The notes under the pieces are model-generated. The model was not told the DNA's origin and searched no databases. It saw nothing but the letters and a program-made list of their open reading frames with translations. From Macrostomum hystrix (taxonomy: Eukaryota > Animalia > Platyhelminthes), in NCBI GenBank assembly GCA_950097015.1, contig CATNEN010000012.1, positions 2,356,001 through 2,420,000 on the forward strand: DNA of 64,000 nt. The letters run 5' to 3'. The position numbers and the translations under genes are program-made. Below, piece after piece: positions 9,498-57,887 of this stretch (position 1 is its first letter; each line of letters begins with the position of its first letter).

Positions 9498-10434
9498 TAT
9501 ATTTGCCAACTTTCTCTGTACTCCAAATCCCGAACTCCAAATCCAAAAATCCCAAACTCCAAATCCTGAAATCCCGAACTCCAAATCCTGAAATCCCGAA
9601 CTCCAAATCCTGAAATCGCGAACTCCAAATCCTAAAATCCCGAACTCCAAATCCTAAAATCCCGAACTCTCCAAATCCGAAAATCCCGAACTCCAAATCC
9701 GAAAATCCCGAACTCTCCAAATCCGAAAATCCCGAACTCCAAATCCTGAAATCCCGAACTCCAAATCCTGAAATCCCGAACTCCAAATCCTGAAATCCCG
9801 AACTCCAAATCCGAAAATCCCGAACTCCAAATCCTAAAATCCCGAACTCCAAATCCTGAAATCCCGAACTCCAAATCCTGAAATCCCGAACTCCAAATCC
9901 TGAAATCCCGAACACCAAATCCTAAAATCCCGAACTCCAAATCTTAAAATCCCGAACTCTCCAAATTCTGAAATCCCGAACTCCAAATCCTGAAATCGCG
10001 AACTTCAAATCCTAAAATCCCGAACTCCAAATCCTAAAATCCCGAACTCTCCAAATCCGAAAATCCCGAACTCCAAATCCTGAAATCCCGAACTCCAAAT
10101 CCTGAAATCCCGAACTCCAAATCCGAAAATCCCGAACTCTCCAAATCCGAAAATCCCGAACTCCAAATCCTGAAATCCCGAACTCCAAATCCTGAAATCC
10201 CGAACTCCAAATCCTGAAATCCCGAACTCCAAATCCTAAAATCCCGAACTCCAAATCCTGAAATCCCGAACTCCAAATCCAAAAATCCCGAACTCCAAAT
10301 CCGAAAATCCCGAACTCCAAATCCTGAAATCCCGAACTCCAAATCCTGAAATCCCGAACTCCAAATCCAAAAATCCCGAACTCCAAATCCAAAAATCCCG
10401 AACTTCTAAACCTGAAACCCCCTCTTCAGAATCC
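9498..10434 (+). repeat. 22 bp minisatellite with short non-repetitive ends, copy 2
   Basis: Same unit and same terminal sequences as 6388-7251, same orientation. Confidence 0.93.
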
Positions 10435-42182: not shown

Positions 42183-43159
42183 TAAAAATTTGAGGGCATT
42201 TTTAAGCTTGGGATTCGTGAAGATTAGGCAATTTGAAGCATTCCGTTTGGGGATTTCTAGGAAACTCCAAGATGGTGCCTCACCTCCACTCCAGCACTCC
42301 CACCTCCCAACCTCCCGCTAGCAGCTCCGCTCTCCCACCGCAGTCTATTCCCTTGCTCCTATTTCTCCCATAGCAGCCTCTCTGCGCCCGTGCAGCTGCA
42401 ACAACTGCTGGAAGCGGTCAGCCCCAGTGCGGCAGTACCGCTTGTAGGCAGAAAAATTAATGAGCTACCGCAGCGAGCCACCTAGCCAGTCAGTTAGTTG
42501 GCCCACTCTACTTGGAGAGAGAGAGAGAAGCATGACAGGCAAAAAAGTTCCCCAAAAAGCTATGAAAGCTCTCCCTCAAGGATCCCAGCATGCAGTGTCC
42601 GCTGCGGCTGCAGCTGCCTGCCGACGCTGCCGCCGCTGCCGCCGCCGCCGCTACTCCATCGCTGTTTTGGCCGTGAGAATCGCGCAGCTGTGAAATATTT
42701 ATGCTGGGACAACCAACCCCCTCCTTCTCTACTAACCCACCCCAATGCAACCCGGCCTCCCACCAAGATTAAACAATGCCCCCCTTGCGTCCATCGGCAG
42801 CTGGCTCTCTGGCCCAGGCTCCACCTTTCTGAGCAGCCTCATCAGTCAGCGGCTGTTCTCATCCGTGCCTGCATGAGATCGGCCATTTCATCTGCCATAT
42901 AGTGTGCTGTATATTCAATTAAGAATACGCGCGCACACACACACGAGAGCACAGGTACAGAGGTATGCTGACAAAAGCTAAAAAACTGTTGCATTTTTCC
43001 TTCTTTATATCGGAGGGATTTGCCGATGCGAGAAACTAGGCGGGGGAGGCAATTTATGTTGAAACAGTTTTTGGCCCTGAATGCTCTCCCACTATGGGGA
43101 TTAATCATGCAGGCTTTGCTTCTATACTCAACTGCATTTTAAACTGCACATAAACTACT

Positions 43160-43650
43160 CCTAGATATCTAATCTCTCCTAGATCTCTACTCTCTCCTAT
43201 ATCTCTACCCTCTCCTATATCTCTACTCTCTCCTAGATCTCTACTCTCTCCTAGATCTCTACGCTCTCCTAGATCTCTACTCCCTCCTAGATCTCTACTC
43301 TCTCCTAGATCTCTACTCTCTCCTATATCTCTACTCTCTCCTAGATCTAAACTCTCTCCTAGATCTCTACGCTCTCCTAGATCTCTACTCCCTCCTATAT
43401 CTCTACTCTCTCCTAGATCTAAACTCTCTCCTAGATCTCTACGCTCTCCTAGATCTCTACTCCCTCCTAGATCTCTACTCTCTCCTATATCTCCACTCTC
43501 TCCTATATCTCTACTCTCTCCTATATCTCTACTCTCTCCTATATCTCTACTCTCTCCTATATCTCTACTCCCTCCTAGATCTCTACTCCCTCCTAGATCT
43601 CTACTCTCTCCTAGATCTCCACTCTCTGATAGATCTCTACTCTCTTCTAG
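43160..43650. repeat. Minisatellite, 18 bp unit CTCTCCTAGATCTCTACT
   Basis: Period 18. Confidence 0.93.
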
Positions 43651-44473
43651 ATCTTCTCTCTCCTGATTCCTCAAATGTCAATGCCTTGTCTTTTCTCTTC
43701 TTTTCTAATCTTAAAAAAGCTGAAGACACGCCTCCTAGTACAAATATAGAAAAAGAGTAGGTAATTTCTCTTGCAAACAATACAGCTTAGCCATCAAACC
43801 CATCAGCACCTGTCAGTTTCACAGGGGGTTCAATATTTGATGCGGTCAGGTCCCCTCATGGCACTTGTACAAGTCAAAAGACAATGAAAAATTAAAGAAA
43901 ATTCGTTTCAGGTTAAAGATACGTAAGTTAATTATTTGTCTGCCGCAGGTGCACTGTCAGTGCACAGTTTTATTTTTCGATGCGTTAGAGACACAGATAG
44001 ACACATATTGCTATATAATTTATATATATAAACAAAGAAGACAATATTATTTAAATAGAACTGAGACTGAACTTGCAATCCGATGTGACAACACCAAATC
44101 ATCAGCACAGGATTTCTTAAAAGCAAAAATTAATTGCACAAATGAACACAAAAAACACAATTAACAGAGGTGCGCAAAACAGACTAGAGACAGGACGAAA
44201 AATGGAGTAAATAGAATAACCAAAACTTGCACAAAACTACTAAACATACTAATAAGAATTCTACGTGCAGAATTGTTTTGTTCGAATCATTGCTGGGTGT
44301 TAAAAGCAAACAGACACAGAGGATTAAACAGTACACACAAGCCATAAAAGAACAGGAAATGCAACATGAGAAAATGGACACCAAATTTGTATAGCGCAGG
44401 CGAGCACAGAACGCAACATCGCTCGAATCACAGAGGTCCAAAGTGTCTATGGCCAAATGTGACAGCGCTCTGC

Positions 44474-46081
44474 TCAGGGCGGACTCATTGGAAGCATGCC
44501 GGGCGAGGCGAACTTCATCCGCTTCTGCTTCTGGCGCTGGTTGCAGAACCAGACTCGCACAACGTTCTTCTTCAGGTTGAGCTTCTCGGCAATCTGGGCG
44601 ATCTTCTCGGAGGACGGCCGCGGCTGCACGTGGAAGTAAGCCTCCAGCGAGCGCTTCTCGGCGTCCGTTATCGACGTCCGCTTGCGCTTCTTGTCTAGGC
44701 CGTCGCCGTAGACATCCGGGTTCTTCTGCCGCTCCATGGCGACGTGCTCGGCCTCCTCCAGCCAGGCGTGGAGCACCGGCTTCAGCGCGATCATGTTGTT
44801 GTGGCTCAAGGTCAGCGACTCGAACCGGCAGATGGTGGACTGGGACAGCGAGCCGACGCCGGGCAGTTTCAGGTTGCCGAGAGCCTTGCCAACATCGGCC
44901 TGAGTGACGCCCAGTTTAATGCGCCTCTGTTTGAAGCGCTCGGCGAAGGCTTCGAGTTCGCGCGGATCGTAATCTAATTCGCCGATTGACGGCGTCGGCA
45001 TGTGCAACGGCATGGCGTAGTGATGCTGCTGGCCTTGAGGCGATGCTGGGCTGCCGCAACCGCCCGCCAGGCCCATGTGGGCGTTGGAGTTGATTGCGCC
45101 GGGGGAGGTATTGATTGCGTAGGCGGCTGATGCGGGATAAGCGTAGCCCGCCACAGCCCCCATCGCGTGCAGATGCGACTCGAAGCCGGAGCTGTGGTGC
45201 ATGTCCTGCATGTACAGGGCGTGCTGATGCTGCTGCTGATGCTGCTGCTGCTGCTGCTGTGCATGATGAAGCTGATGTTGATGCTGAGATGCGTGGTGCA
45301 ATAGCTGCTGCTGCTGCTGCTGCTGTTGCTGCTGTTGAAGCTGCTGAGAATGCTGCTGAAGCTGCGGTGGCGGCGGCTGCTGCTGCTGCTGCATCTGCTG
45401 GCTAAGCGTTGGTCGGCATGGAGTCTCGAAGCCGGTAGCGTAATGCAAGCCGTCATGGTGATGCCGCAGGAATGGCACGGTCGGCATGGCGCGCGGCTTG
45501 ATGTCGCCGCTCTCAACCAGATTAGCAGCTCGGACCAGGATGTTCTCATCCAGATTGAATGCGGCAGCCTGTAGTGGTGACCGAGTGGGTTGGCTGAGGA
45601 TGAGTACAGATTTCGAACCTGCCAGTCATCCGTTTCAAATACAAATGATGCATTGATGTCAGGTTTTATGCCAAGTGAAACTGCTCGCCGTTTATAACAA
45701 AAATCCCCCTAAAATAAACACTGTAAGCTTTCTCACGCATCAGTTTCATCTTTCAAATCCACCCCTACTCCTTCACTGGATGCGTTCAAGCTATTTGCCA
45801 ACCGAGCAAACATTGGTAAGCTCGTGTAGGGCAGTGAAGTGAAGCCTTGCTTTGAATCTTTAGGGATCAGAAAGAAGTACAATTTATTCGATGGCGAAAC
45901 TCACCGACGATCCGCACCTCCGCATGGCCTCCCAGGAGTTTCGGTACTGCGCTCCGCCCGCTCCCTGGTACAGGCCGTCCATCATGTCCTGATGATGCGG
46001 GTTGCCAGCCGCTGCCGCGGTCGCCGCCGCAGCCGCAGCCGCTGCCGCGGCCGCAGCAGCCGACTGGCCCCAATCGTCCAT
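44474..46081 (-). CDS. pou4: Canonical POU class IV (Brn-3/UNC-86/Acj6) transcription factor, ~423 aa (exons 46081-45905, 45568-44474)
   Basis: Exon 1 ends SWEAMRRCGSS (cf. EAIRRAC of POU4F), donor GTGAGT. Exon 2 starts AAAFNLDENILVRAANL (POU-IV box), then DPRELEAFAERFKQRRIKLGVTQADVG...SHNNMIALKP and KKRKRTSI...WFCNQRQKQKRMKF. Phase-0 intron 45569-45904. The frame stays open upstream of ATG 46081, so the true start could be further 5'. Confidence 0.96.
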
Positions 46082-47224: not shown

Positions 47225-47862
47225 GACAATCTTGGGATTAAACGAATGAAGGGGATATTAACAATCTTGGGATTAAACGAATGAAGGGGATATTAACAAT
47301 CTTGGGATTCGAAGAATGAAGGGGATATCAACAATCTTGGGATTCGAAGAATGAAGGGGATATCAACAATCTTGGGATTCGAAGAATGAAGGGGATATTA
47401 ACAATCTTGGGATTCGAAGAATGAAGGGGATATCAACAATCTTGGGATTAAACGAATGAAGGGGATATTAACAATCTTGGGATTCGAAGAATGAAGGGGA
47501 TATTAACAATCTTGGGATTCGAAGAATGAAGGGGATATCAACAATCTTGGGATTCGAAGAATGAAGGGGATATTAACAATCTTGGGATTAAACGAATGAA
47601 GGGGATATTAACAATCTTGGGATTCGAAGAATGAAGGGGATATCAACAATCTTGGGATTCGAAGAATGAAGGGGATATCAACAATCTTGGGATTAAACGA
47701 ATGAAGGGGATATTAACAATCTTGGGATTCGAAGAATGAAGGGGATATCAACAATCTTGGGATTAAACGAATGAAGGGGATATCAACAATCTTGGGATTA
47801 AACGAATGAAGGGGATATTAACAATCTTGGGATTTGACCAATGAAGGGGATATTGACAATCT
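47225..47862. repeat. Minisatellite, 35 bp unit AACAATCTTGGGATTCGAAGAATGAAGGGGATATC (two interleaved variants)
   Basis: Period 35. Confidence 0.95.
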
Positions 47863-48962
47863 TGAAATTCATTCAAACAATTCAATGATTCTCTTGACTT
47901 CATATATCTGATATTTGAGGCTGAGGAGCTAAATGAAAAATTAATTACTCGTATTTATCTACCTACAATGCGATTTTGCTAAGTGGTTCTAAATGTCTTT
48001 CAAAAACAGAACTCCTCCAGCGTCCGGGTTTTGACAGAAAATTGAAAATGAAAGCTGCTATCTGTTTCAAGTGAGACACTCAGCCCAATGCACTTCACAA
48101 GTTAAACAATGTAGAACAATATCAAATGGGGTCGAATTGTCTATACACGTGCCCAATCGATGAAAAGGCCTGTATGCTCACGATATCGGGCTGGACAGCA
48201 GGTATTGTTTAACCTTACCTTGTTGGTGTTGTCAGTTTGATAACCCCGAATCGCAAGAGATTGCATCACCCATCATCTGCTGACAAGATTTTGCCTAGTG
48301 GGACTTGAGCGCAAATATGTGCCATATTAGGCTTGGGAAAGCAAAACACAGTGCGGCCCAACACAGAGTTTAATTAACCCACCAGACTCTTGCCTACCTT
48401 TGCTCCTCTTCATCACCAGGGTTTTGAGTTGTGGTATGGGCTAAGGCTTCAGTTTGAACTATGAAATATTTCTATAAGGCCTAAGTAATCGCGCCGAGAA
48501 TTAATAATTAACAATCTTTTGGGTTCCAGCTAAACAGAGATAACGATTTTCCTCATCTAACTAGCTGGCAAAATCTCCAGTGCGACAGCAATATGAAAGC
48601 AGATATTTTCATAAGCTGTAATATAACAATGCCTGTTATAATACTTCTGTGAAACAAACCTGCACTGCCTCCACTAACCATGAATGCGTGCGTGGTCATT
48701 AATTAAAAAACTGTTTATGAATGAGAAATAAACTTGCCACCGCTCAAACACATCGCTTTTATATAAACACATCGAAACAGAAGGCGGGCGAATCACTTTG
48801 ACAAACAAATGCGAATTGACCCCTCTTAGATGCATTATTAAATTTGTTACCTTGATTTTTAGAAACACAAAGATTAACAATGGAATGGGACACACGGGAA
48901 ATTATGTGCTGGTTAGATCAGAAAGGCAACAATGAAAAGGCTGTATAATATAAACATGTACA

Positions 48963-49335
48963 TGAAGAAGAGTAGATGAGAGGGGCGGAAGAGTAGATGA
49001 GAGGGGCGGAAGAGTAGATGAGAGGGGCGGAAGAGTAGATGAGAGGGGCGGAAGAGTAGATGAGAGGGGCGGAAGAGTAGATGAGAGGGGCGAAAGATTA
49101 GATGAGAGGGGCGGAAGAGTAGATGAGATGGGCGGAAGAGTAGATGAGAGGGGCGGAAGAGTAGATGAGAGGGGCGGAAGAGTAGATGTGAGGGGGGGGT
49201 AAGAGTAGATGAGATGGGCGGAAGAGTAGATGAGAGGGGCGGAAGAGTAGATGAGAGGGGCGGAAGAGTAAATGAGAGGGGCGAAAGAGTACAAGTGAGG
49301 GGCGGAAGAGCAGATGATAGGGGCGGAAGAGCGGA
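48963..49335. repeat. Minisatellite, 21 bp unit GAAGAGTAGATGAGAGGGGCG
   Basis: Period 21; lies just 3' of GNB1L. Confidence 0.93.
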
Positions 49336-49493
49336 CAAAAGTAGCGGAAGAGGATAATATCCGCGGAAGAGCAGATAAAAGAGGAAGAGCGAAGAAGTTA
49401 AAAGAAAGAAACCATTTGAAAATAGTTATATCAAAACTCAAGCAAAGTTCGTATCGCGGTTCGAATTCAGAAATGCAGCGCCAAGAACAAGTC

Positions 49494-50642
49494 TCAGTGT
49501 CGCTGCTGAGCATAGAGCTCCCAGGCGCAGATCAGGCCCTCCTTATCTCCGCTATAAAAACAGCCGGTCTCAGAATTGAATGCCAGCGCGCTAACACTGC
49601 TACTATGAGTAGACAGTACGGCGAGCGGCTTGCAGGCTCTGCCAGAATAGACTCGAATTCTCGTGTCCCAGGAGGCGGACAGCAGCAGGCGACCGTCTGG
49701 CCGGTAGGTCAGGCAGCCGACGCCCGGACTGGGGCCGCTGGTCCTGCCGCGCAGGCTCACCCGGATGCCGTCCACGCTTATCAAGGCGAAGTCGGGCGTG
49801 GCCGAGCCGGCCACTCCACGGCCCGCCGCGGGGCTGTAGTCTATGGCCATAACTGGCTCTTCAAATAGGCGAATGCGGCAAAGGCGCGCCGGCCAGCGAA
49901 TCAGTTCGCAGTGGCCGCTCTCGTAGCCGGCTAGGAAGAAGGGCAGACTGGTAGCGGACGAGGGAGCAGAAGGATCGATTGGGGCGGGTAAGGGGGCGGA
50001 AGAATTGGAGGAAGCGGCAGACGGGGCAGAAGGGTCGGAGCAGGCGGTAGTGCGGGCGGAAGGATCGGAGGATGTGGAAGTGGGGGCGGAGGAGGGGGCG
50101 GAAGGATCGGAGCTGGCGGTATTAGCCGCTACAACCAGAGCCAGGGCCATGCAGACGCCGAGTTCGGACTTGTCAAAAGCGTAGATTTCCGATTCTCCAA
50201 CAGCTGCAGCCGTTTGAAAAAATCGGCACCGCAAAGTCTCTCCGCCGCTGCCCGGATACAGGAGGAAAGCTGGAGTAGCTAGGGCGCGGCAGAAGGTCAA
50301 ATCGCAGGCGTCCGAAATGCGCACCTCCGACTCAGACAAGCAGCGAGCCGAATCCGCGTTCAAATCAACGTGCCACAACAAAATTAGGCCGTCACGTCCC
50401 TGGCTAGCTACTAGCAGTAGGCTAGGCAGAAAGTTTAGCGACAAAATTGCGGCCGAATGAGCACCCGAGCGAGTTTCCAGCGGCCTGCGGACGCGCAGAT
50501 CCCAGCAGACCAGCTGGCCGGACTGGTGGCCGGAGAGCAGCAGCTGGCGAGGGCAGCCGCGGTCGACGGCAAGGGAGGCCAGGGCGGTTACTGGCGAGCT
50601 CAGCGCCCGCAGGGTAAAAGCTGGCACGCAGGGATTCTCCGA
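49494..50642 (-). CDS. GNB1L: GNB1L / Asa1-family WD40 protein, single long exon with no in-frame ATG at its 5' end
   Basis: PAFTLR, LLSGHQSGQLVCWDL, SQGRDG, LAGYESG, RPDGRLLLSASWDTRIRVY and ICAWELY match recalled GNB1L motifs. Candidate acceptor CCCGCAG at 50649-50643, phase 0. The 28 further codons in the ORF track come largely from the satellite. Confidence 0.88.
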   Translation of the reverse strand, partial: SENPCVPAFTLRALSSPVTALASLAVDRGCPRQLLLSGHQSGQLVCWDLRVRRPLETRSGAHSAAILSLNFLPSLLLVASQGRDGLILLWHVDLNADSARCLSESEVRISDACDLTFCRALATPAFLLYPGSGGETLRCRFFQTAAAVGESEIYAFDKSELGVCMALALVVAANTASSDPSAPSSAPTSTSSDPSARTTACSDPSAPSAASSNSSAPLPAPIDPSAPSSATSLPFFLAGYESGHCELIRWPARLCRIRLFEEPVMAIDYSPAAGRGVAGSATPDFALISVDGIRVSLRGRTSGPSPGVGCLTYRPDGRLLLSASWDTRIRVYSGRACKPLAVLSTHSSSVSALAFNSETGCFYSGDKEGLICAWELYAQQRH

Positions 50643-50671
50643 CTGCGGGCATCCGGCAGATATGGCTGCTT

Positions 50672-52804
50672 TCTCCAACCACAAACCCTCTCTAATTAGT
50701 GAGTCTGCAACCACAACCCTCTCCAATTAGTGAGTCTGCAACCACAAACCCTCTCCAATTAGTGAGTCTGCAACCACAACCCTCTCTAATTAGTGAGTCT
50801 GCAACCACAACCCTCTCCAATTAGTGAGTCTGCAACCACAACCCTCTCTAATTAGTGAGTCTGCAACCACAACCTTCTCTAATTAGTGAGTCTGCAACCA
50901 AAACCCTCTCTAATTAGTGAGTCTGCAACCACAACCCTCTCTAATTAGTGAGTCTGCAACCACAACCTTCTCTAATTAGTGAGTCTGCAACCAAAACCCT
51001 CTCTAATTAGTGAGTCTGCAACCACAACCCTCTCTAATTAGTGAGTCTGCAACCACAACCCTCTCTAATTAGTGAGTCTGCAACCACAACCCTCTCTAAT
51101 TAGTGAGTCTGCAACCACAACCCTCTCCAATTAGTGAGTCTGCAACCACAACCCTCTCCAATTAGTGGGTCTGCAACCACAACCCTCTCCAATTAGTGAG
51201 TCTGCAACCACAACCCTCTCCAATTAGTGGGTCTGCAACCACAACCCTCTCCAATTAGTGAGTCTGCAACCACAAACCCTCTCCAATTAGTGAGTCTGCA
51301 ACCACAACCCTCTCTAATTAGTGAGTCTGCAACCACAACCCTCTCCAATTAGTGAATCTGCAACCACAACCCTCTCCAATTAGTGAGTCTGCAACCACAA
51401 CCCTCTCCAATTAGTGAGTCTGCAACCAAAACCCTCTCCAATTAGTGAGTCTGCAACCACAAACCCTCTCCAATTAGTGAGTCTGCAACCACAACCCTCT
51501 CCAATTAGTGAGTCTGCAACCACAACCCTCTCCAATTAGTGAGTCTGCAACCACAAACCCTCTCCAATTAGTGAGTCTGCAACCACAACCCTCTCCAATT
51601 AGTGAGTCTGCAACCACAACCCTCTCCAATTAGTGAGTCTGCAACCACAACCCTCTCCAATTAGTGAGTCTGCAACCACAAACCCTCTCCAATTAGTGAG
51701 TCTGCAACCACAACCCTCTCTAATTAGTGAGTCTGCAACCACAACCCTCTCTAATTAGTGAGTCTGCAACCACAACCCTCTCTAATTAGTGAGTCTGCAA
51801 CCACAACCCTCTCCAATTAGTGAGTCTGCAACCACAACCCTCTCTAATTAGTGAGTCTGCAACCACAACCCTCTCCAATTAGTGAGTCTGCAACCAAAAC
51901 CCTCTCCAATTAGTGAGTCTGCAACCACAACCCTCTCCAATTAGTGAGTCTGCAACCACAACCCTCTCTAATTAGTGAGTCTGCAACCACAACCCTCTCT
52001 AATTAGTGAGTCTGCAACCACAACCCTCTCTAATTAGTGAGTCTGCAACCACAACCCTCTCTAATTAGTGAGTCTGCAACCACAACCCTCTCTAATTAGT
52101 GAGTCTGCAACCACAACCCTCTCTAATTAGTGAGTCTGCAACCACAAACCCTCTCCAATTAGTGAGTCTGCAACCACAACCCCTCCAATTAATGAGTCTG
52201 CAACCACAACCCTCTCTAATTAGTGAGTCTGCAACCACAACCCTCTCTAATTAGTGAGTCTGCAACCACAACCCTCTCCAATTAGTGAGTCTGCAACCAC
52301 AACCCTCTCCAATTAGTGAGTCTGCAACCACAACCCTCTCCAATTAGTGAGTCTGCAACCACAACCCTCTCTAATTAGTGAGTCTGCAACCACAACCCTC
52401 TCCAATTAGTGAGTCTGCAACCAAAACCCTCTCCAATTAGTGAGTCTGCAACCACAACCCTCTCCAATTAGTGAGTCTGCAACCACAACCCTCTCTAATT
52501 AGTGAGTCTGCAACCACAACCCTCTCTAATTAGTGAGTCTGCAACCACAACCCTCTCTAATTAGTGAGTCTGCAACCACAACCCTCTCTAATTAGTGAGT
52601 CTGCAACCACAACCCTCTCTAATTAGTGAGTCTGCAACCACAACCCTCTCTAATTAGTGAGTCTGCAACCACAACCCTCTCTAATTAGTGAGTCTGCAAC
52701 CACAACCCTCTCTAATTAGTGAGTCTGCAACCACAACCCTCTCTAATTAGTGAGTCTGCAACCACAACCCTCTCTAATTAGTGAGTCTGCAACCACAACC
52801 CTCT
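50672..52804. repeat. Satellite, 31 bp unit ATTAGTGAGTCTGCAACCACAACCCTCTCTA (~2.1 kb), abutting the GNB1L 5' end
   Basis: Period 31. Confidence 0.97.
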
Positions 52805-53424: not shown

Positions 53425-54118
53425 GGTACCTCAGCTGGAGTTTGAAAATGAGGTGGTGGGTGCCTCAGCTGGAGTTTGAAAATGAGGTGGTGGGTGCCTC
53501 AGCTGGAGTTTGAAAATGAGGTGGTGGGTGCCTCAGCTGGAGTTTGAAAATGAGGTGGTGGGTGCCTCAGCTGGAGTTTGAAAATGAGGTGGTGGGTGCC
53601 TCAGCTGGAGTTTTAAAATGAGGTGGTGGGTGCCTCAGCTGGAGTTTGAAAATGAGGTGGCGGGTGCCCCAGCTGGAGTTTGAAAATGAGGTGGTGGGTA
53701 CCTCAGCTGGAAATTGAAAATGAGGTGGTGGGTGCCCCAGCTGGAGTGAAAATGAGGTGGTGGGTGCCCCAGCTGGGGTGAGAAAATGAGGTGGTGGGTG
53801 CCCCAGCTGGGGTGAGAAAATGAGGTGGTGGGTGCCCCAGCTGGAGTGAAAATGAGGTGGTGGGTGCCCCAGCTGGGGTGAGAAAATGAGGTGGTGGGTG
53901 CCCCAGCTGGGGTGAGAAAATGAGGTGGTGGGTGCCCCAGCTGGGGTGAGAAAATGAGGTGGTGGGTGCCCCAGCTGAGGTGAGAAAATGAGGTGGTGGG
54001 TGCCCCAGCTGGGGTGAGAAAAGGAGGTGGTGGGTGCCTCAGCTAGGGTGAGCAAATGAGGTTGATGGTGCCTCAGCTGGGGTGAGCAAATGAGGTTGAT
54101 GGTGCCTCAGCTGGGGTG
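53425..54118. repeat. Minisatellite, ~34 bp unit CCTCAGCTGGAGTTTGAAAATGAGGTGGTGGGTG, with a variant gradient along the array
   Basis: Period 34 at the left; the unit shifts to CCCCAGCTGGGGTGAGAAAATG... at the right. Confidence 0.93.
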
Positions 54119-54605
54119 CAAAATGGTTGAGTTCTATTTCAGGGTTAATAGAATGATGTGTTGGTCGAAGGTTGACTTAAAGTGGCGATTTGTCTATTAA
54201 ACTGTTTCTAGCAACTACAGTCTACCAACGTCTGTGTACCATAAGCGTAGATCAAGCAGTCGAAACTTAACTAATTAACTGCCAATATAAAAATACTGAC
54301 GAAAAGTTTGTGAAAACAAAACTGGAACGTTTGATTTGAGATTTGTTAATTTAAAAAATACATTACAACTGTACTCTGCCATGTAAGTGAGTAATAAATT
54401 AAGTAAAAATACTTATTACATAACGGTTTATAAATCGCCTACTAACAGAACAAAGGAAACGGAAGCCAATCACAAAAAATTATTTTGAAAATTACTTGCT
54501 TATCAAACAGTGAAAAATACAGCAAGCTAGTAAAGCAACACATAGGTGCAACTCGGCAATTGAATCTTCGACTGCCTGTTTCTGTATAATTTCACGGCTT
54601 GACAA

Positions 54606-55000
54606 TCAATGCACCCACCACCCAATTTCACTGCCCGACCAATGCACCCACCGCCCCATTTCACTGCCTGACCAATGCACCCACCACCCCATTTCCCTGC
54701 CTGACCAATGCACCACCGCCCCATTTCACTGCCTGACCACTGCACCCACCGCCCCATTTCACTGCCTGACCAATGCACCCACCACCCCATTTCACTGCCT
54801 GACCAATGCACCCACCGCCCCATTTCACTGCCTGACCAATGCACCCACAGCCCTATTTCACTCCCTGACCACTGCACCCACCGCCCCATTTCACTGCCTG
54901 ACCAATGCACACACCGCCCCATTTCACACCCTGACCACTGCACCCACCGCCCCATTTCACACCCTGACCACTGCACCCACCACCGCCTCATTTCACTCCC
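54606..55000. repeat. Minisatellite, 33 bp unit CCAATGCACCCACCGCCCCATTTCACTGCCTGA
   Basis: Period 33. Confidence 0.92.
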
Positions 55001-55499
55001 AGACCCCATCTACAATATGTCGTCTCATGGACCCAATCAAATTTCCTTAGATTACTTTAGTCGCGTCCTAATTTACTAAAAATTGCACACGAGCTGCTAT
55101 GCATTCAGTAATTTACGTTATTAACCAACAAAAAACAAAGGCAGCTTGAGAAAAAGAGGCAAGCAACGCATGTAAAAAGTAAATAAGAATGGGATAAATA
55201 TTAAATAATTACATGCACGAAAAAACCTGTCAGGAAAAGCAGCCATTCGAATAGCACATTTCAAATAGGCAGATGTTCAAGTTGACACCTAAAGCCCAGG
55301 CACAACATTTGGCAGCTTTTGTTTTATTAAAATCTATTAAGCCGGAAAAATACGCAATTAAAACGTGCTAACCAGACATGACTAAACAAAGACAAAGCAG
55401 GAAAAATTGATTTAATTGATATTGCTGAATCAATGGGATTCTTTATAGAAGTGCTAGAGAAATTTAGGGAGCGATTAAAATAAGCCGAGAGCTTCTGTG

Positions 55500-57887
55500 T
55501 CAGCGGCGCGACAGACGATAGGCGACGAAGCAGGCGCAGGCGGCGAGGGCGCACAGGCCAATTAGCAGCGGCACATCCAGCGTCTGGATAGCCATGTGGG
55601 TGACAGAGCGCTGCGATAGACGGATTAAGAATTAAGCTGTTATCTGCCATATTTTTTAGAACTTGAACGGATAGTTTCTTGCGTTAAGATTTTAGCGACA
55701 ATATTTTTTTCTACAATTCAATATTTAAAAGCAGACATTGCGGTGTATCTTTGTATAGCGCTGCTCATTCTCAAACAATGCTAGTTTAAGTATAATGTAA
55801 TGCCAATACACACAGACACACACACTATAGAAATTATAGAAATGAAAAAATAGAAAAATATCGAGAAATATAGAGGAAAGATCGATTAGGACTATGATAC
55901 TGATCGTGGGAAAAATCGATCGAGAACTATTGCAATTAATATAGGGAAATATCGATTGATTGCAACTGACGTAGAGAAATATCGATTGATTGCAACTGAC
56001 GTAAAGAAATATCGATTGATTGCAACTGACGTAAAGAAATATCGATTGATTGCAACTGATGTGGGGAAATATCGATTGATTGCAACTGATGTAAAGAAAT
56101 ATCGATTAATTGCAACTGACGTAAAGAAATATCGATTGATTGCAACTGATGTGGGGAAATATCGATTGATTGCAACTGACGTAAAGAAATATCGATTAAT
56201 TGCAACTGATGTAAAGAAATATCAATTAATTGCAACTGATGTGGGGAAATATCGATTGATTGCAACTGACGTAAAGAAATATCGATTGATTGCAACTAAC
56301 GTAAAGAAATATCGATTGATTGCAACTGATGTGGGGAAAAATCGATTGATTGCAACTGACGTAAAGAAATATCGATTAATTGCAACTGATGTGGGGAAAT
56401 ATCGATTGATTGCAACTGATGTAGGGAAATATCGATTGATTCCAACTGATGTAGGGAAATATCGATTGATTCCAACTGATGTAGGGAAATATCGATTGAT
56501 TCCAACTGATGTAGGGAAATATCGATTGATTCCAACTGATGTAGGGAAATATCGATTGATTCCAACTGATGTGGGGAAATATCGATGGATTGCAACTGAT
56601 GTAGGGAAATATCGATTGATTCCAACTGATGTAGGGAAATATCGATTGATTCCAACTGATGTGGGGAAATATCGATTGATTGCAACTGATGTAGGGAAAT
56701 ATCGATTGATTCCAACTGATGTAGGGAAATATCGATTGATTCCAACTGATGTAGGGAAATATCGATTGATTCCAACTGATGTAGGGAAATATCGATTGAT
56801 TCCAACTGATGTAGGGAAATATCGATTGATTCCAACTGATGTGGGGAAATATCGATTGATTGCAACTGATGTAGGGAAATATCGATTGATTCCAACTGAT
56901 GTAGGGAAATATCGATTGATTCCAACTGATGTAGGGAAATATCGATTGATTCCAACTGATGTAGGGAAATATCGATTGATTCCAACTGATGTAGGGAAAT
57001 ATCGATTGATTCCAACTGATGTAGGGAAATATCGATTGATTGCAACTAATCGAGGAAACAAATTGCTACTGATCGAATGACTCATGAGTAACTGAAATAG
57101 GTTGGGCATACGAGTAATCCGCTACTCCTTGCCTTCTATAATCGATACTCACCCAACCGCCGTGATCGGCGATCCACTTAGCGATGCGCTCTGCAACCAG
57201 GAACTGGCAGATCCATTTTACCACCTGGCGCACAAAGCCGGAAGCGCCGTGGCTAATTTTCTCCATGGCGATGCGGTAGCCAAAGCAGAACAAGGCCACA
57301 ATGCGGCCCCAGTTAATGGTGCCATCGTAGAACAAGCGTTGAGCAACGCGGCGGAAGGTTTCAAACGAGGTGGCGGTGTCCGTCAGCTGGCCGTCCAGTG
57401 CCTTCATCATCTCGTCGAATTCTGGCTGGTATCGTCGCTGAATGTCGTCGCCAATCTCGGCTAGCTGGCGACCGATGCGCGCCTCAACAGAGAGCGGATT
57501 TGGCGGCGGCTGGGCCAACTCCGGCGAGCTTGGCGTTCCCGGCCGCAGGTGGCCCTGCGGATTAAAATGAGATTCCAATTATTCTATAGATTCAAACTCT
57601 GGCCTAAGAAATTAATATTGTAGAATCACCTGCTCTCGGTCCCTAGAATAGCGCTCGAATACGAAGGCTTGAAAGACCACAGTGGCATCGCGCTCAACGT
57701 TCTCAACGGTATCGGGCGGACTCTCCGGCTCGCAGAAGACCCTGGGCGTCAGCGGATGATCGCCGCCGCCGACGGCGCCAGCAGGCGTCTCCTCTGTCTC
57801 GATTGAATCGTGCGCCGGAATATCGGGAATGTCCTCTGGATTATAACTGAAGCGATTGCCTTCTGGGCAGTCACCGCCGCTTGCCAT
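55500..57887 (-). CDS. BAK1: Pro-apoptotic multi-BH-domain Bcl-2 family effector, BAK-like, 256 aa (exons 57887-57630, 57554-57153, 55610-55500)
   Basis: BH3 IGRQLAEIGDDIQRRY (BAK-type GRQLxxIGDDI), BH1 FYDGTINWGRIVALFCFG, BH2 IAKWIADHGGW. A third exon absent from the ORF track encodes the tail anchor RSVTHMAIQTLDVPLLIGLCALAACACFVAYRLSRR-stop. All junctions are phase 0 GT-AG. BAK rather than BAX is a motif-based judgement. Confidence 0.9.
55940..57050. repeat. Minisatellite, 30 bp unit AAATATCGATTGATTCCAACTGATGTAGGG, in BAK intron 2
   Basis: Period 30; no indels visible. Confidence 0.96.

What the first reader, a model, noticed from the sequence alone, without database searches (positions are those of the whole stretch)
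50620..50726. GNB1L has no start codon: candidate for an initiator AUG donated by the spliced leader
The first in-frame Met is ~190 codons into the ORF, well inside the WD40 fold, and upstream lies 2.1 kb of satellite. A CAG at 50645-50643 is followed in phase 0 by SENPCVPAFTLR, about where orthologues begin. Flatworm spliced leaders are established to end in AUG, and that AUG has been shown in Schistosoma to initiate translation. Trans-splicing here would give M-SENPCVPAFTLR exactly in frame. The satellite unit also carries CACTAAT on the minus strand, a branch-point-like motif, so the array may supply the branch site. This depends on the organism being a flatworm, which is inferred.
Basis: partly seen in the sequence, partly recalled or inferred. 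Interest (0 to 1): 0.72.

Follow-up and report, generated by a model that had tools for sequence, protein, structure and literature searches.

The report
ATG-less flatworm GNB1L gene, leader-supplied start
A conserved WD40 gene (probably GNB1L) of a Macrostomum flatworm has no start codon of its own and most likely borrows the AUG that ends the trans-spliced leader, a mechanism already known in flatworms; the RNA reads that would prove the junction could not be obtained here.

Summary
A single-exon WD40 ORF lies on the minus strand (49494-50726). Its first in-frame ATG is codon 193. A 31-bp satellite of 68.6 copies abuts it, and CCGCAG at 50648-50643 is followed in phase 0 by SENPCVPAFTLR.

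The organism is a Macrostomum flatworm. Two M. lignano loci share the gene order Bcl-2 / WD40 / POU and about 80% exon identity. Both also lack an in-frame ATG and carry the same CCGCAG directly before TCC GAG. Homology between the species starts exactly 6 nt before the exon. The first 30-60 codons are under purifying selection (dN/dS about 0.2).

No conserved upstream exon was found, and no ATG-to-GTRAG micro-exon in phase. The Macrostomum spliced leader ends in ATG according to published work. I therefore rate a leader-donated start codon at about 0.68.

One addition: the satellite unit is an amplified copy of a short upstream element that M. lignano keeps as a single copy at the same distance from the acceptor. 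Each unit looks like a 3' splice site that would give only M-T-H-stop.

The scan has already confirmed leader-donated starts for other genes of this genome.

The parts
49494..50642 (-). Single coding exon of the WD40 (GNB1L-like) gene, from TCG (Ser, would-be codon 2) to the stop codon at 49496-49494
   Evidence: ORF list and reading. Pfam WD40. Atlas top hits are all GNB1L/Asa1/DSE1 at 0.97. 72% aa identity to the M. lignano orthologue with dN/dS about 0.25.
50643..50648 (-). CCGCAG, the candidate 3' splice (trans-splice) acceptor; the exon starts at 50642 in phase 0
   Evidence: The identical hexamer lies directly before TCC GAG in M. lignano L001 (9281-9286) and L002 (9018-9023). blastn homology starts exactly here.
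50650..50652 (-). Out-of-frame ATG 7 nt upstream of the acceptor. It is the only ATG on this strand between 52905 and the exon, and trans-splicing at 50643 would remove it
   Evidence: It opens the frame of the 86-aa overlapping ORF 50422..50682. It is not conserved in M. lignano.
50695..50708 (-). Last copy of GCAGACTCACTAAT (acceptor-like GCAG plus branch-point-like CTAAT), beginning 66 nt upstream of the exon start. Its counterpart is the single-copy GCAGACTGCTAAT, beginning 64 nt upstream of the exon in M. lignano
   Evidence: banded alignment, 10 of 3000 shuffles reach the score; MAFFT aligns them.
50672..52804 (-). 31-bp satellite, 68.6 copies. The unit ACTCACTAATTAGAGAGGGTTGTGGTTGCAG holds CTAAT, then TTGCAG ending 22 nt downstream of the CTAAT branch A. 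There is no ATG on the gene's strand
   Evidence: TTGCAG fits the M. lignano trans-splice motif [T/C]TNCAG (PMC8629364). A leader joined there reads M-T-H-stop.
50148..50150 (-). First in-frame ATG (codon 193 of the ORF, within ...ELGVCMALALV...), well inside the WD40 fold
   Evidence: The same holds in M. lignano.
49960..50125 (-). In-frame low-complexity insert (SDPSAPSS-type coding minisatellite) whose length varies between the three loci
   Evidence: TRF 49992-50112. Alignment gaps. Longer and frame-shifted in L002.
55500..55615 (-). Last exon and stop codon (55502-55500) of the upstream Bcl-2-family gene on the same strand. This marks the upstream limit of the intergenic region (4.86 kb)
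   Evidence: blastn to the M. lignano Bcl-2 gene and translation.

Best explanation
The gene is a functional, single-exon GNB1L-type WD40 gene of a Macrostomum flatworm, and its genomic copy carries no initiator codon. Its pre-mRNA is transcribed through the upstream satellite, which is the outron. The spliced leader, which in Macrostomum ends in ...TTGCATG, is trans-spliced to the CCGCAG acceptor at 50648-50643. The leader's terminal AUG then lies directly in front of TCG GAG AAT CCC, and translation gives M-SENPCVPAFTLR.... Trans-splicing also removes the out-of-frame ATG at 50652 and the satellite. Shown here: the missing ATG, the in-phase acceptor, their conservation in M. lignano, and purifying selection right up to the acceptor. 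Inferred: that the 5' partner is the spliced leader rather than a cis exon, and that the leader AUG is the codon used.
For: There is no in-frame ATG before codon 193. An in-frame stop lies 87 nt upstream of the exon start in the window (TAA 50729-50727), and one lies 111 nt upstream in M. lignano (TAA at L001 9176, read). Both M. lignano copies also lack an ATG and have the identical CCGCAG|TCC GAG junction. blastn homology between the species begins at window 50648 = L001 9281, and nothing else in the 4.86-kb (window) or 2.1-kb (M. lignano) intergenic region aligns. The N-terminal 20 residues NPCVPAFTLRALSSPVTALA are invariant despite many synonymous changes. dN/dS is 0.19-0.26 in the first 30-60 codons with dS of 1.0-1.4 there, and dS over the whole ORF is 0.76. 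So the protein is made and starts close to this point. No ATG-initiated ORF reaches a GTRAG donor in phase 0 anywhere between the Bcl-2 stop and the acceptor in the window or in L001. The M. lignano leader ends in ATG, about 30% of its genes are trans-spliced with an enrichment for conserved genes, and CAG is the acceptor core (PMC8629364). The leaders of M. hystrix and M. cliftonense are highly conserved and likely contain the ATG (PMC10468722). Use of the leader AUG as initiator is established in Schistosoma (PMC9851317 citing Cheng et al. 2006). Earlier notes of this scan report RNA-confirmed cases in the same genome (not checked by me).
Against: CCGCAG lacks the T at position -5 of the published [T/C]TNCAG motif, although only 44% of sites carry that motif. 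The pyrimidine tract is weak. No consensus branch site lies within the 21-nt AG-free zone before the acceptor. Stronger-looking acceptors lie upstream (TTGCAG in every satellite unit, and AAGCAG|CC at 50666), all of them unproductive. About a third of M. lignano donors are not GTRAG, so a small cis exon is not excluded. The NCBI models of the M. lignano orthologues are 5'-partial C-terminal fragments and say nothing about the 5' end.
Confidence: 0.68

Rival explanations
1. A small upstream exon (5' UTR plus ATG, perhaps a few codons) is cis-spliced to the same CCGCAG acceptor. The satellite is then simply intron 1.
For: The conserved acceptor fits cis-splicing equally well. Other notes describe satellite-filled introns in this genome, and the Bcl-2 gene here carries a 30-bp array inside an intron.
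Against: No block between the Bcl-2 stop and the acceptor is conserved between the species. No ATG-initiated ORF reaches a GTRAG donor in phase 0 in 4852 nt of the window or 2081 nt of L001. The two hits in L002 lie in degenerate satellite and are absent from L001. The gene strand holds only seven ATGs in the stretch scanned (53425-50643).
Confidence: 0.15
2. The leader is trans-spliced, but mainly or only at other acceptors. These are the satellite's TTGCAG sites or AAGCAG|CC at 50666 (unproductive), or the in-phase weak sites TTGGAG|AAA at 50672 or TCGGAG|AAT at 50636, which would give M-KAAISAGCPQSENPC... or M-NPCVPAF....
For: TTGCAG fits the published motif exactly and lies 22 nt after a CTAAT branch-like site in each unit. 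AAGCAG is the first CAG beyond the last CTAAT. Phases and products are listed. In M. lignano the homologous GTGCAG|ACT is in phase with the ORF.
Against: The unproductive sites cannot yield the conserved protein, which selection shows is made. GAG acceptors are poor. Only CCGCAG is conserved between the species at the edge of the coding homology. The 20-residue extension possible in M. lignano has no counterpart here, where it reads T-H-stop.
Confidence: 0.08
3. Translation starts at a near-cognate codon (TTG, GTG, ATA, CTG) on an unspliced or differently processed mRNA.
For: In-frame near-cognate codons exist upstream and just inside the exon: TTG 50726, GTG 50714, TTG 50684 and 50678, ATA 50663, GTG 50627, CTG 50612.
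Against: None of the upstream ones is conserved in M. lignano. The first AUG of an unspliced mRNA would be the out-of-frame one at 50652. Sole reliance on non-AUG initiation is rare for a conserved housekeeping-type gene (general knowledge).
Confidence: 0.05

Closest known systems
Leader-donated initiator AUG in Schistosoma mansoni (Cheng, Cohen, Ndegwa and Davis 2006, J Biol Chem 281:733; summarised in PMC9851317 as 'slORFs')
   Same: The flatworm leader ends in AUG. The recipient gene has no in-frame AUG at its conserved N-terminus. The acceptor AG lies in phase 0 directly before codon 2.
   Different: This is a free-living macrostomid, not a trematode. The junction is inferred from two-species comparison, not seen in RNA. 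The outron here is a 2.1-kb satellite made of splice-site-like units.
SL trans-splicing in Macrostomum lignano, M. hystrix and M. cliftonense (PMC8629364, PMC5730564, PMC10468722)
   Same: Same genus and a 35-nt leader ending in ATG. Conserved genes are preferentially trans-spliced. The acceptor core is CAG. Repeats inflate the regions upstream of trans-spliced genes.
   Different: Those papers do not list this gene; no mention of GNB1L or of the two Mlig gene ids was found in text or held supplements. The acceptor CCGCAG does not fit the enriched [T/C]TNCAG motif at position -5.
GNB1L / yeast Asa1 / plant DSE1 family of seven-bladed WD40 proteins
   Same: WD40 repeats. Length matches once the low-complexity insert is removed. 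All best Atlas clusters carry these three names, for the whole protein and for its N-terminal half.
   Different: No alignment-based or structure-based test of orthology succeeded. This protein carries a coding minisatellite insert of about 60 residues.

Membership tests
Flatworm genes whose initiator AUG is donated by the spliced leader | The organism trans-splices a leader that ends in AUG | tested here: met
   The window is a Macrostomum locus: synteny and about 80% exon identity to M. lignano NIVC01000662.1 and NIVC01001793.1. The leader sequence ending in ATG is taken from PMC8629364 and PMC10468722. No SL RNA gene lies in the window itself.
Flatworm genes whose initiator AUG is donated by the spliced leader | No in-frame genomic ATG at or upstream of the conserved N-terminus before an in-frame stop | tested here: met
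   for the window. The same holds in both M. lignano copies.
Flatworm genes whose initiator AUG is donated by the spliced leader | AG acceptor in phase 0 immediately before the first conserved codon | tested here: met
   CCGCAG|TCG at 50648-50643|50642. It is conserved in M. lignano, and the coding homology starts there.
Flatworm genes whose initiator AUG is donated by the spliced leader | Transcripts carry the leader joined to that acceptor | not testable with these tools
The protein collections hold no transcript product of the 5' half.
Flatworm genes whose initiator AUG is donated by the spliced leader | No cis-spliced upstream exon supplies the ATG | tested here: inconclusive
   There is no conserved upstream block and no ATG-to-GTRAG exon in phase. 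Non-consensus donors and unconserved micro-exons cannot be excluded.
Flatworm genes whose initiator AUG is donated by the spliced leader | The leader AUG is the codon at which translation starts | not testable with these tools
   This needs ribosome profiling or N-terminal proteomics.
GNB1L / Asa1 / DSE1 WD40 family | WD40 beta-propeller protein of about 320-340 residues | tested here: met
   Pfam WD40 with 3 stretches, E 2.4e-17. The protein is 382 aa with a low-complexity insert of about 60 aa. Atlas GNB1L clusters are 321-334 aa.
GNB1L / Asa1 / DSE1 WD40 family | Specific (orthologue-level) similarity to named GNB1L proteins | tested here: inconclusive
   Language-model feature search: the top clusters are all GNB1L, then Asa1 and DSE1, at 0.96-0.97, and the N-terminal half gives GNB1L at 0.95-0.96. 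Sequence searches were swamped by generic multi-WD40 proteins. PDB holds no named GNB1L among the hits. The AlphaFold model was too poor to search with (pLDDT 35.7).
Downstream gene of a Macrostomum operon (resolved by SL trans-splicing) | Repeat-adjusted distance to the upstream same-strand gene below 1 kb (criterion of PMC8629364) | tested here: not met
   The Bcl-2 stop at 55500 to the acceptor at 50643 is 4857 nt. Subtracting the three TRF arrays (2133 + 701 + 399 nt) leaves about 1.6 kb. In M. lignano the distance is about 2.1 kb, or about 1.3 kb after adjustment.

The most novel reading that the evidence does not exclude
The 31-bp satellite is not inert filler. It is a 69-fold amplification of a conserved outron element (GCAGACT..CTAAT, single copy at the same distance from the acceptor in M. 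lignano). Each unit forms a branch-site-plus-TTGCAG module that matches the trans-splice motif. The array would then act as a bank of decoy trans-splice acceptors producing dead-end leader-AUG-ACU-CAC-UAA mRNAs, so that array length tunes how much pre-mRNA reaches the single productive acceptor. Together with two similar first-reader notes elsewhere in this genome, this would point to a general tendency of Macrostomum satellites to arise from, and interfere with, 3' splice sites.
Probability: 0.12. Interest if true: 0.6.

Novelty: new member of a known kind. Interest (0 to 1): 0.3.

Why it matters
If confirmed, this adds one more conserved gene to the set whose protein cannot be predicted from the genome alone in flatworms. 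Annotation pipelines that trim the leader, ATG included, or that require a genomic ATG will truncate or drop such genes. The M. lignano orthologues are in fact deposited only as 141-aa and 181-aa C-terminal fragments. The mechanism itself has been known since 2006, and this scan has already confirmed it for other genes of the same genome, so the gain is incremental. The more unusual point is that the outron next to the productive acceptor is a satellite built from a conserved splice-site-like element. That makes this locus a convenient test case for how trans-splicing chooses among many tandem candidate acceptors.

Tried and rejected
I did not use read laying, because it takes run ids only from that tool, and I did not substitute accession numbers from papers.

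2. Transcript-derived proteins.
- The three word searches found only generic WD40 proteins or nothing: whole protein, its N-terminal region, and the M. lignano N-terminal piece.
- Exact look-ups of four forms of the protein failed.

3. Exhaustive HMMER search. It was swamped by long multi-WD40 proteins. Its one useful hit was the M. lignano fragment P0009, which led to loci L001 and L002.

4. Structure. AlphaFold2 on the two-sequence alignment gave pLDDT 35.7, which is unusable, so no fold search was run.

5. PDB sequence searches showed only generic WD40 chains.

6. Literature and supplements of four Macrostomum papers were searched for GNB1L or for the two Mlig gene ids. Nothing was found.

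7. Rfam and a leader-pattern search found no SL RNA gene in the window.

8. The bacterial promoter/terminator scan is irrelevant for a eukaryote and was ignored.

9. Operon with the upstream Bcl-2 gene. It was considered and rejected on the published distance criterion.

10. Assembly error or pseudogene as the reason for the missing ATG. This was rejected: three loci from two species agree, and dN/dS is about 0.25.

I did not build or search a joined leader-plus-exon sequence.
Full report
**What is there**

On the minus strand an open frame runs from 50726 to the stop at 49496-49494. It encodes a WD40 protein (Pfam PF00400, E 2.4e-17). In-frame Met codons occur only at codon 193 (ATG 50150-50148, inside ...ELGVCMALALV...) and codon 293.

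Immediately upstream lies a 31-bp satellite at 50672-52804, with 68.6 copies and 97% matches. The upper 28 codons of the mechanical ORF are just the last satellite units read through. An in-frame TAA lies at 50729-50727.

CCGCAG occupies 50648-50643. The next base, 50642, is in phase 0 and begins TCG GAG AAT CCC TGC GTG... = SENPCVPAFTLR.

**Which organism**

The exhaustive protein search was swamped by long multi-WD40 proteins. Its best hit, however, was a 141-aa fragment 81% identical to the C-terminus (P0009). That fragment is Macrostomum lignano PAA78859.1, and a second copy is PAA64000.1.

Both M. lignano loci were fetched: L001 (NIVC01000662.1) and L002 (NIVC01001793.1). Both show the gene order Bcl-2 / WD40 / POU-homeobox. 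The window has the same order on its minus strand:
- Bcl-2 exons at 57887-57626, 57562-57138 and 55615-55497, with the stop at 55502-55500.
- The WD40 gene.
- A POU gene at 45487-44474.

Exon identity is about 80% at the DNA level and 72% at the protein level. The window therefore comes from a Macrostomum species other than M. lignano. The flatworm premise of the finding is confirmed.

**Is it GNB1L?**

The language-model feature search puts the whole protein next to clusters named GNB1L (0.97). Next come ASTRA-associated protein 1 and DECREASED SIZE EXCLUSION LIMIT 1, which to my knowledge are the fungal and plant names of the same family. The N-terminal 175 residues alone also land on GNB1L clusters (0.95-0.96).

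Those clusters are 321-334 aa. This protein is 382 aa and includes a low-complexity insert of about 60 residues. No alignment-based or fold-based confirmation succeeded:
- Word searches.
- PDB sequence searches.
- AlphaFold on two sequences, pLDDT 35.7.

I treat the GNB1L assignment as probable, not proven. The main question does not depend on it.

**Comparative test of the 5' end**

Both M. lignano copies read ...LNAPQ|SEHNPCVPAFTLRALSSPVTALA.... The DNA is ...cttaacgctCCGCAG|TCC GAG CAC AAT CCC.... Their first in-frame Met is again in GVCMALAL. An in-frame TAA lies 111 nt upstream of the exon, with no in-frame ATG in between.

A sensitive blastn of the whole upstream interval finds homology only in the Bcl-2 exons and then from window 50648 = L001 9281. 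That position is exactly the first base of CCGCAG.

Downstream of that point, residues NPCVPAFTLRALSSPVTALA are invariant although many third positions differ. By the Nei-Gojobori method:
- dN/dS is 0.19 in the first 30 aligned codons, 0.26 in the first 60 and 0.25 overall.
- dS is 0.76 over the whole ORF and 1.0-1.4 in the first 30-60 codons.

At that divergence neutral DNA should no longer align, and upstream it indeed does not. So:
- The gene is functional.
- The coding sequence begins at or within a few codons of 50642.
- CCGCAG behaves as a conserved exon boundary.
- The lack of an ATG is ancestral to both species and is not an assembly error.

**Where can the AUG come from?**

The M. lignano leader is CGGTCTCTTACTGCGAAGACTCAATTTATTGCATG. 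About 30% of genes receive it, conserved genes preferentially, and the acceptor core is CAG (PMC8629364). The leaders of M. hystrix and M. cliftonense are highly conserved, and the authors note that the leader likely contains the final ATG (PMC10468722). In Schistosoma the leader AUG is known to serve as initiator for genes that need it (Cheng et al. 2006, as summarised in PMC9851317). Joining the leader at 50643|50642 puts its ATG directly in frame with TCG GAG AAT.

The main rival is a small cis exon with its own ATG. I looked for one in three ways:
- No conserved block exists in the 4.86 kb between the Bcl-2 stop and the acceptor.
- The gene strand holds only seven ATGs in the stretch scanned (53425-50643).
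- No ATG-initiated frame reaches a GTRAG donor in phase 0 in the window or in L001. The two hits in L002 lie in degenerate satellite and are absent from L001.

GTRAG covers about 65% of M. lignano donors, so this weakens the rival but does not remove it.

Non-AUG initiation is unlikely. The upstream near-cognate codons are not conserved. An unspliced mRNA would present the out-of-frame ATG at 50652 first.

An operon with Bcl-2 fails the published 1-kb repeat-adjusted criterion, at about 1.6 kb here.

**What speaks against, or is missing**

I also did not build a joined leader-plus-exon sequence.
- The protein collections contain no product of the 5' half of this gene in any Macrostomum. The deposited M. 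lignano models are 5'-partial C-terminal fragments.
- As a splice site CCGCAG is only moderate. It lacks the T at -5 of [T/C]TNCAG, though only 44% of sites carry that motif. Its pyrimidine tract is short. No yUnAy branch consensus lies in the 21-nt AG-free stretch before it.
- Candidate acceptors upstream look stronger but are unproductive. TTGCAG|ACT CAC TAA occurs in each satellite unit, and AAGCAG|CC lies at 50666 in phase 1.

**The satellite**

The unit is ACTCACTAATTAGAGAGGGTTGTGGTTGCAG, with a TTGGAG variant. It contains CTAAT, a branch-point-like yUnAy, followed by TTGCAG, whose final G lies 22 nt downstream of the CTAAT branch A. TTGCAG is a perfect match to the published trans-splice motif.

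M. lignano has a different 20-bp satellite upstream (GGAGAGGGTAAGAGCTGTGG). However, it keeps one copy of GGTGCAGACTGCTAAT that begins 64 nt before its exon. The last satellite unit of the window puts GGTTGCAGACTCACTAAT 66 nt before its exon.

A local alignment restricted to the same distance (within 4 nt) scores 11, and only 10 of 3000 shuffles reach that score. Without the positional restriction the match is marginal (79 of 2000). MAFFT aligns the two elements on its own.

The array thus looks like an amplification of a conserved outron element. Three intervening AGs (at 22, 26 and 30 nt) make it uncertain.

In M. lignano GTGCAG|ACT is in phase with the ORF. In the window the equivalent site runs into TAA after two codons. 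Only the CCGCAG site is therefore productive in both species.

**Verdict**

The interpretation, a leader-donated AUG at 50643|50642, is the best explanation at about 0.68. It rests on two-species comparative evidence and published knowledge of the Macrostomum leader, not on RNA.

It is a new member of a known kind. The scan has already reported RNA-confirmed cases for other genes of this genome (CHMP6, NDUFA5, SFMBT and PPP2R3C; not checked by me). Interest is modest. The splice-site-like satellite in the outron is the part most worth a follow-up.

Noticed in passing
window 49960-50125 (minus strand); L001 9830-9982; L002 about 9570-10140: The WD40 coding sequence carries an in-frame minisatellite (SDPSAPSS / SAPSADP units, period 21-30 nt). 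Its length differs between the three loci. In the second M. lignano copy it is much longer and shifts the frame, which is probably why both M. lignano models are deposited as C-terminal fragments. Its TCCGCCCC core resembles the satellites flanking the gene.
   Followed up: partly
window 48967-49381; L001 10492-12407: Directly after the stop codon both species have a satellite with related units (21 bp here, 22 bp and 87 copies in M. lignano), both containing TCCGCCCCT and CTCATC. An array seems to have been kept at the same position since the species split.
   Followed up: no
window 55497-57887 (minus strand): This is a Bcl-2-family gene of three exons (57887-57626, 57562-57138, 55615-55500) with its own ATG. 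Its last intron holds a 30-bp tandem array (about 55929-57080). AATAAA/ATTAAA signals lie at 55416 and 55328.
   Followed up: partly
window 44474-45487 (minus strand): This is a POU-homeobox gene with a long glutamine/histidine-rich N-terminus. It is syntenic with the POU gene downstream of the WD40 gene in both M. lignano loci.
   Followed up: no
window 50422-50682 (minus strand, +1 frame): An 86-codon ORF overlaps the start of the WD40 exon and contains the ATG at 50652. It would be the first AUG-initiated frame on any transcript not trans-spliced at 50643. It is not conserved in M. lignano, so it is probably meaningless.
   Followed up: partly
window 47226-47864, 53425-54125, 54607-55005, 43105-43674: Many further unrelated tandem arrays with periods of 30-35 bp fill the intergenic space of this window. 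This fits the very repeat-rich Macrostomum genomes.
   Followed up: no
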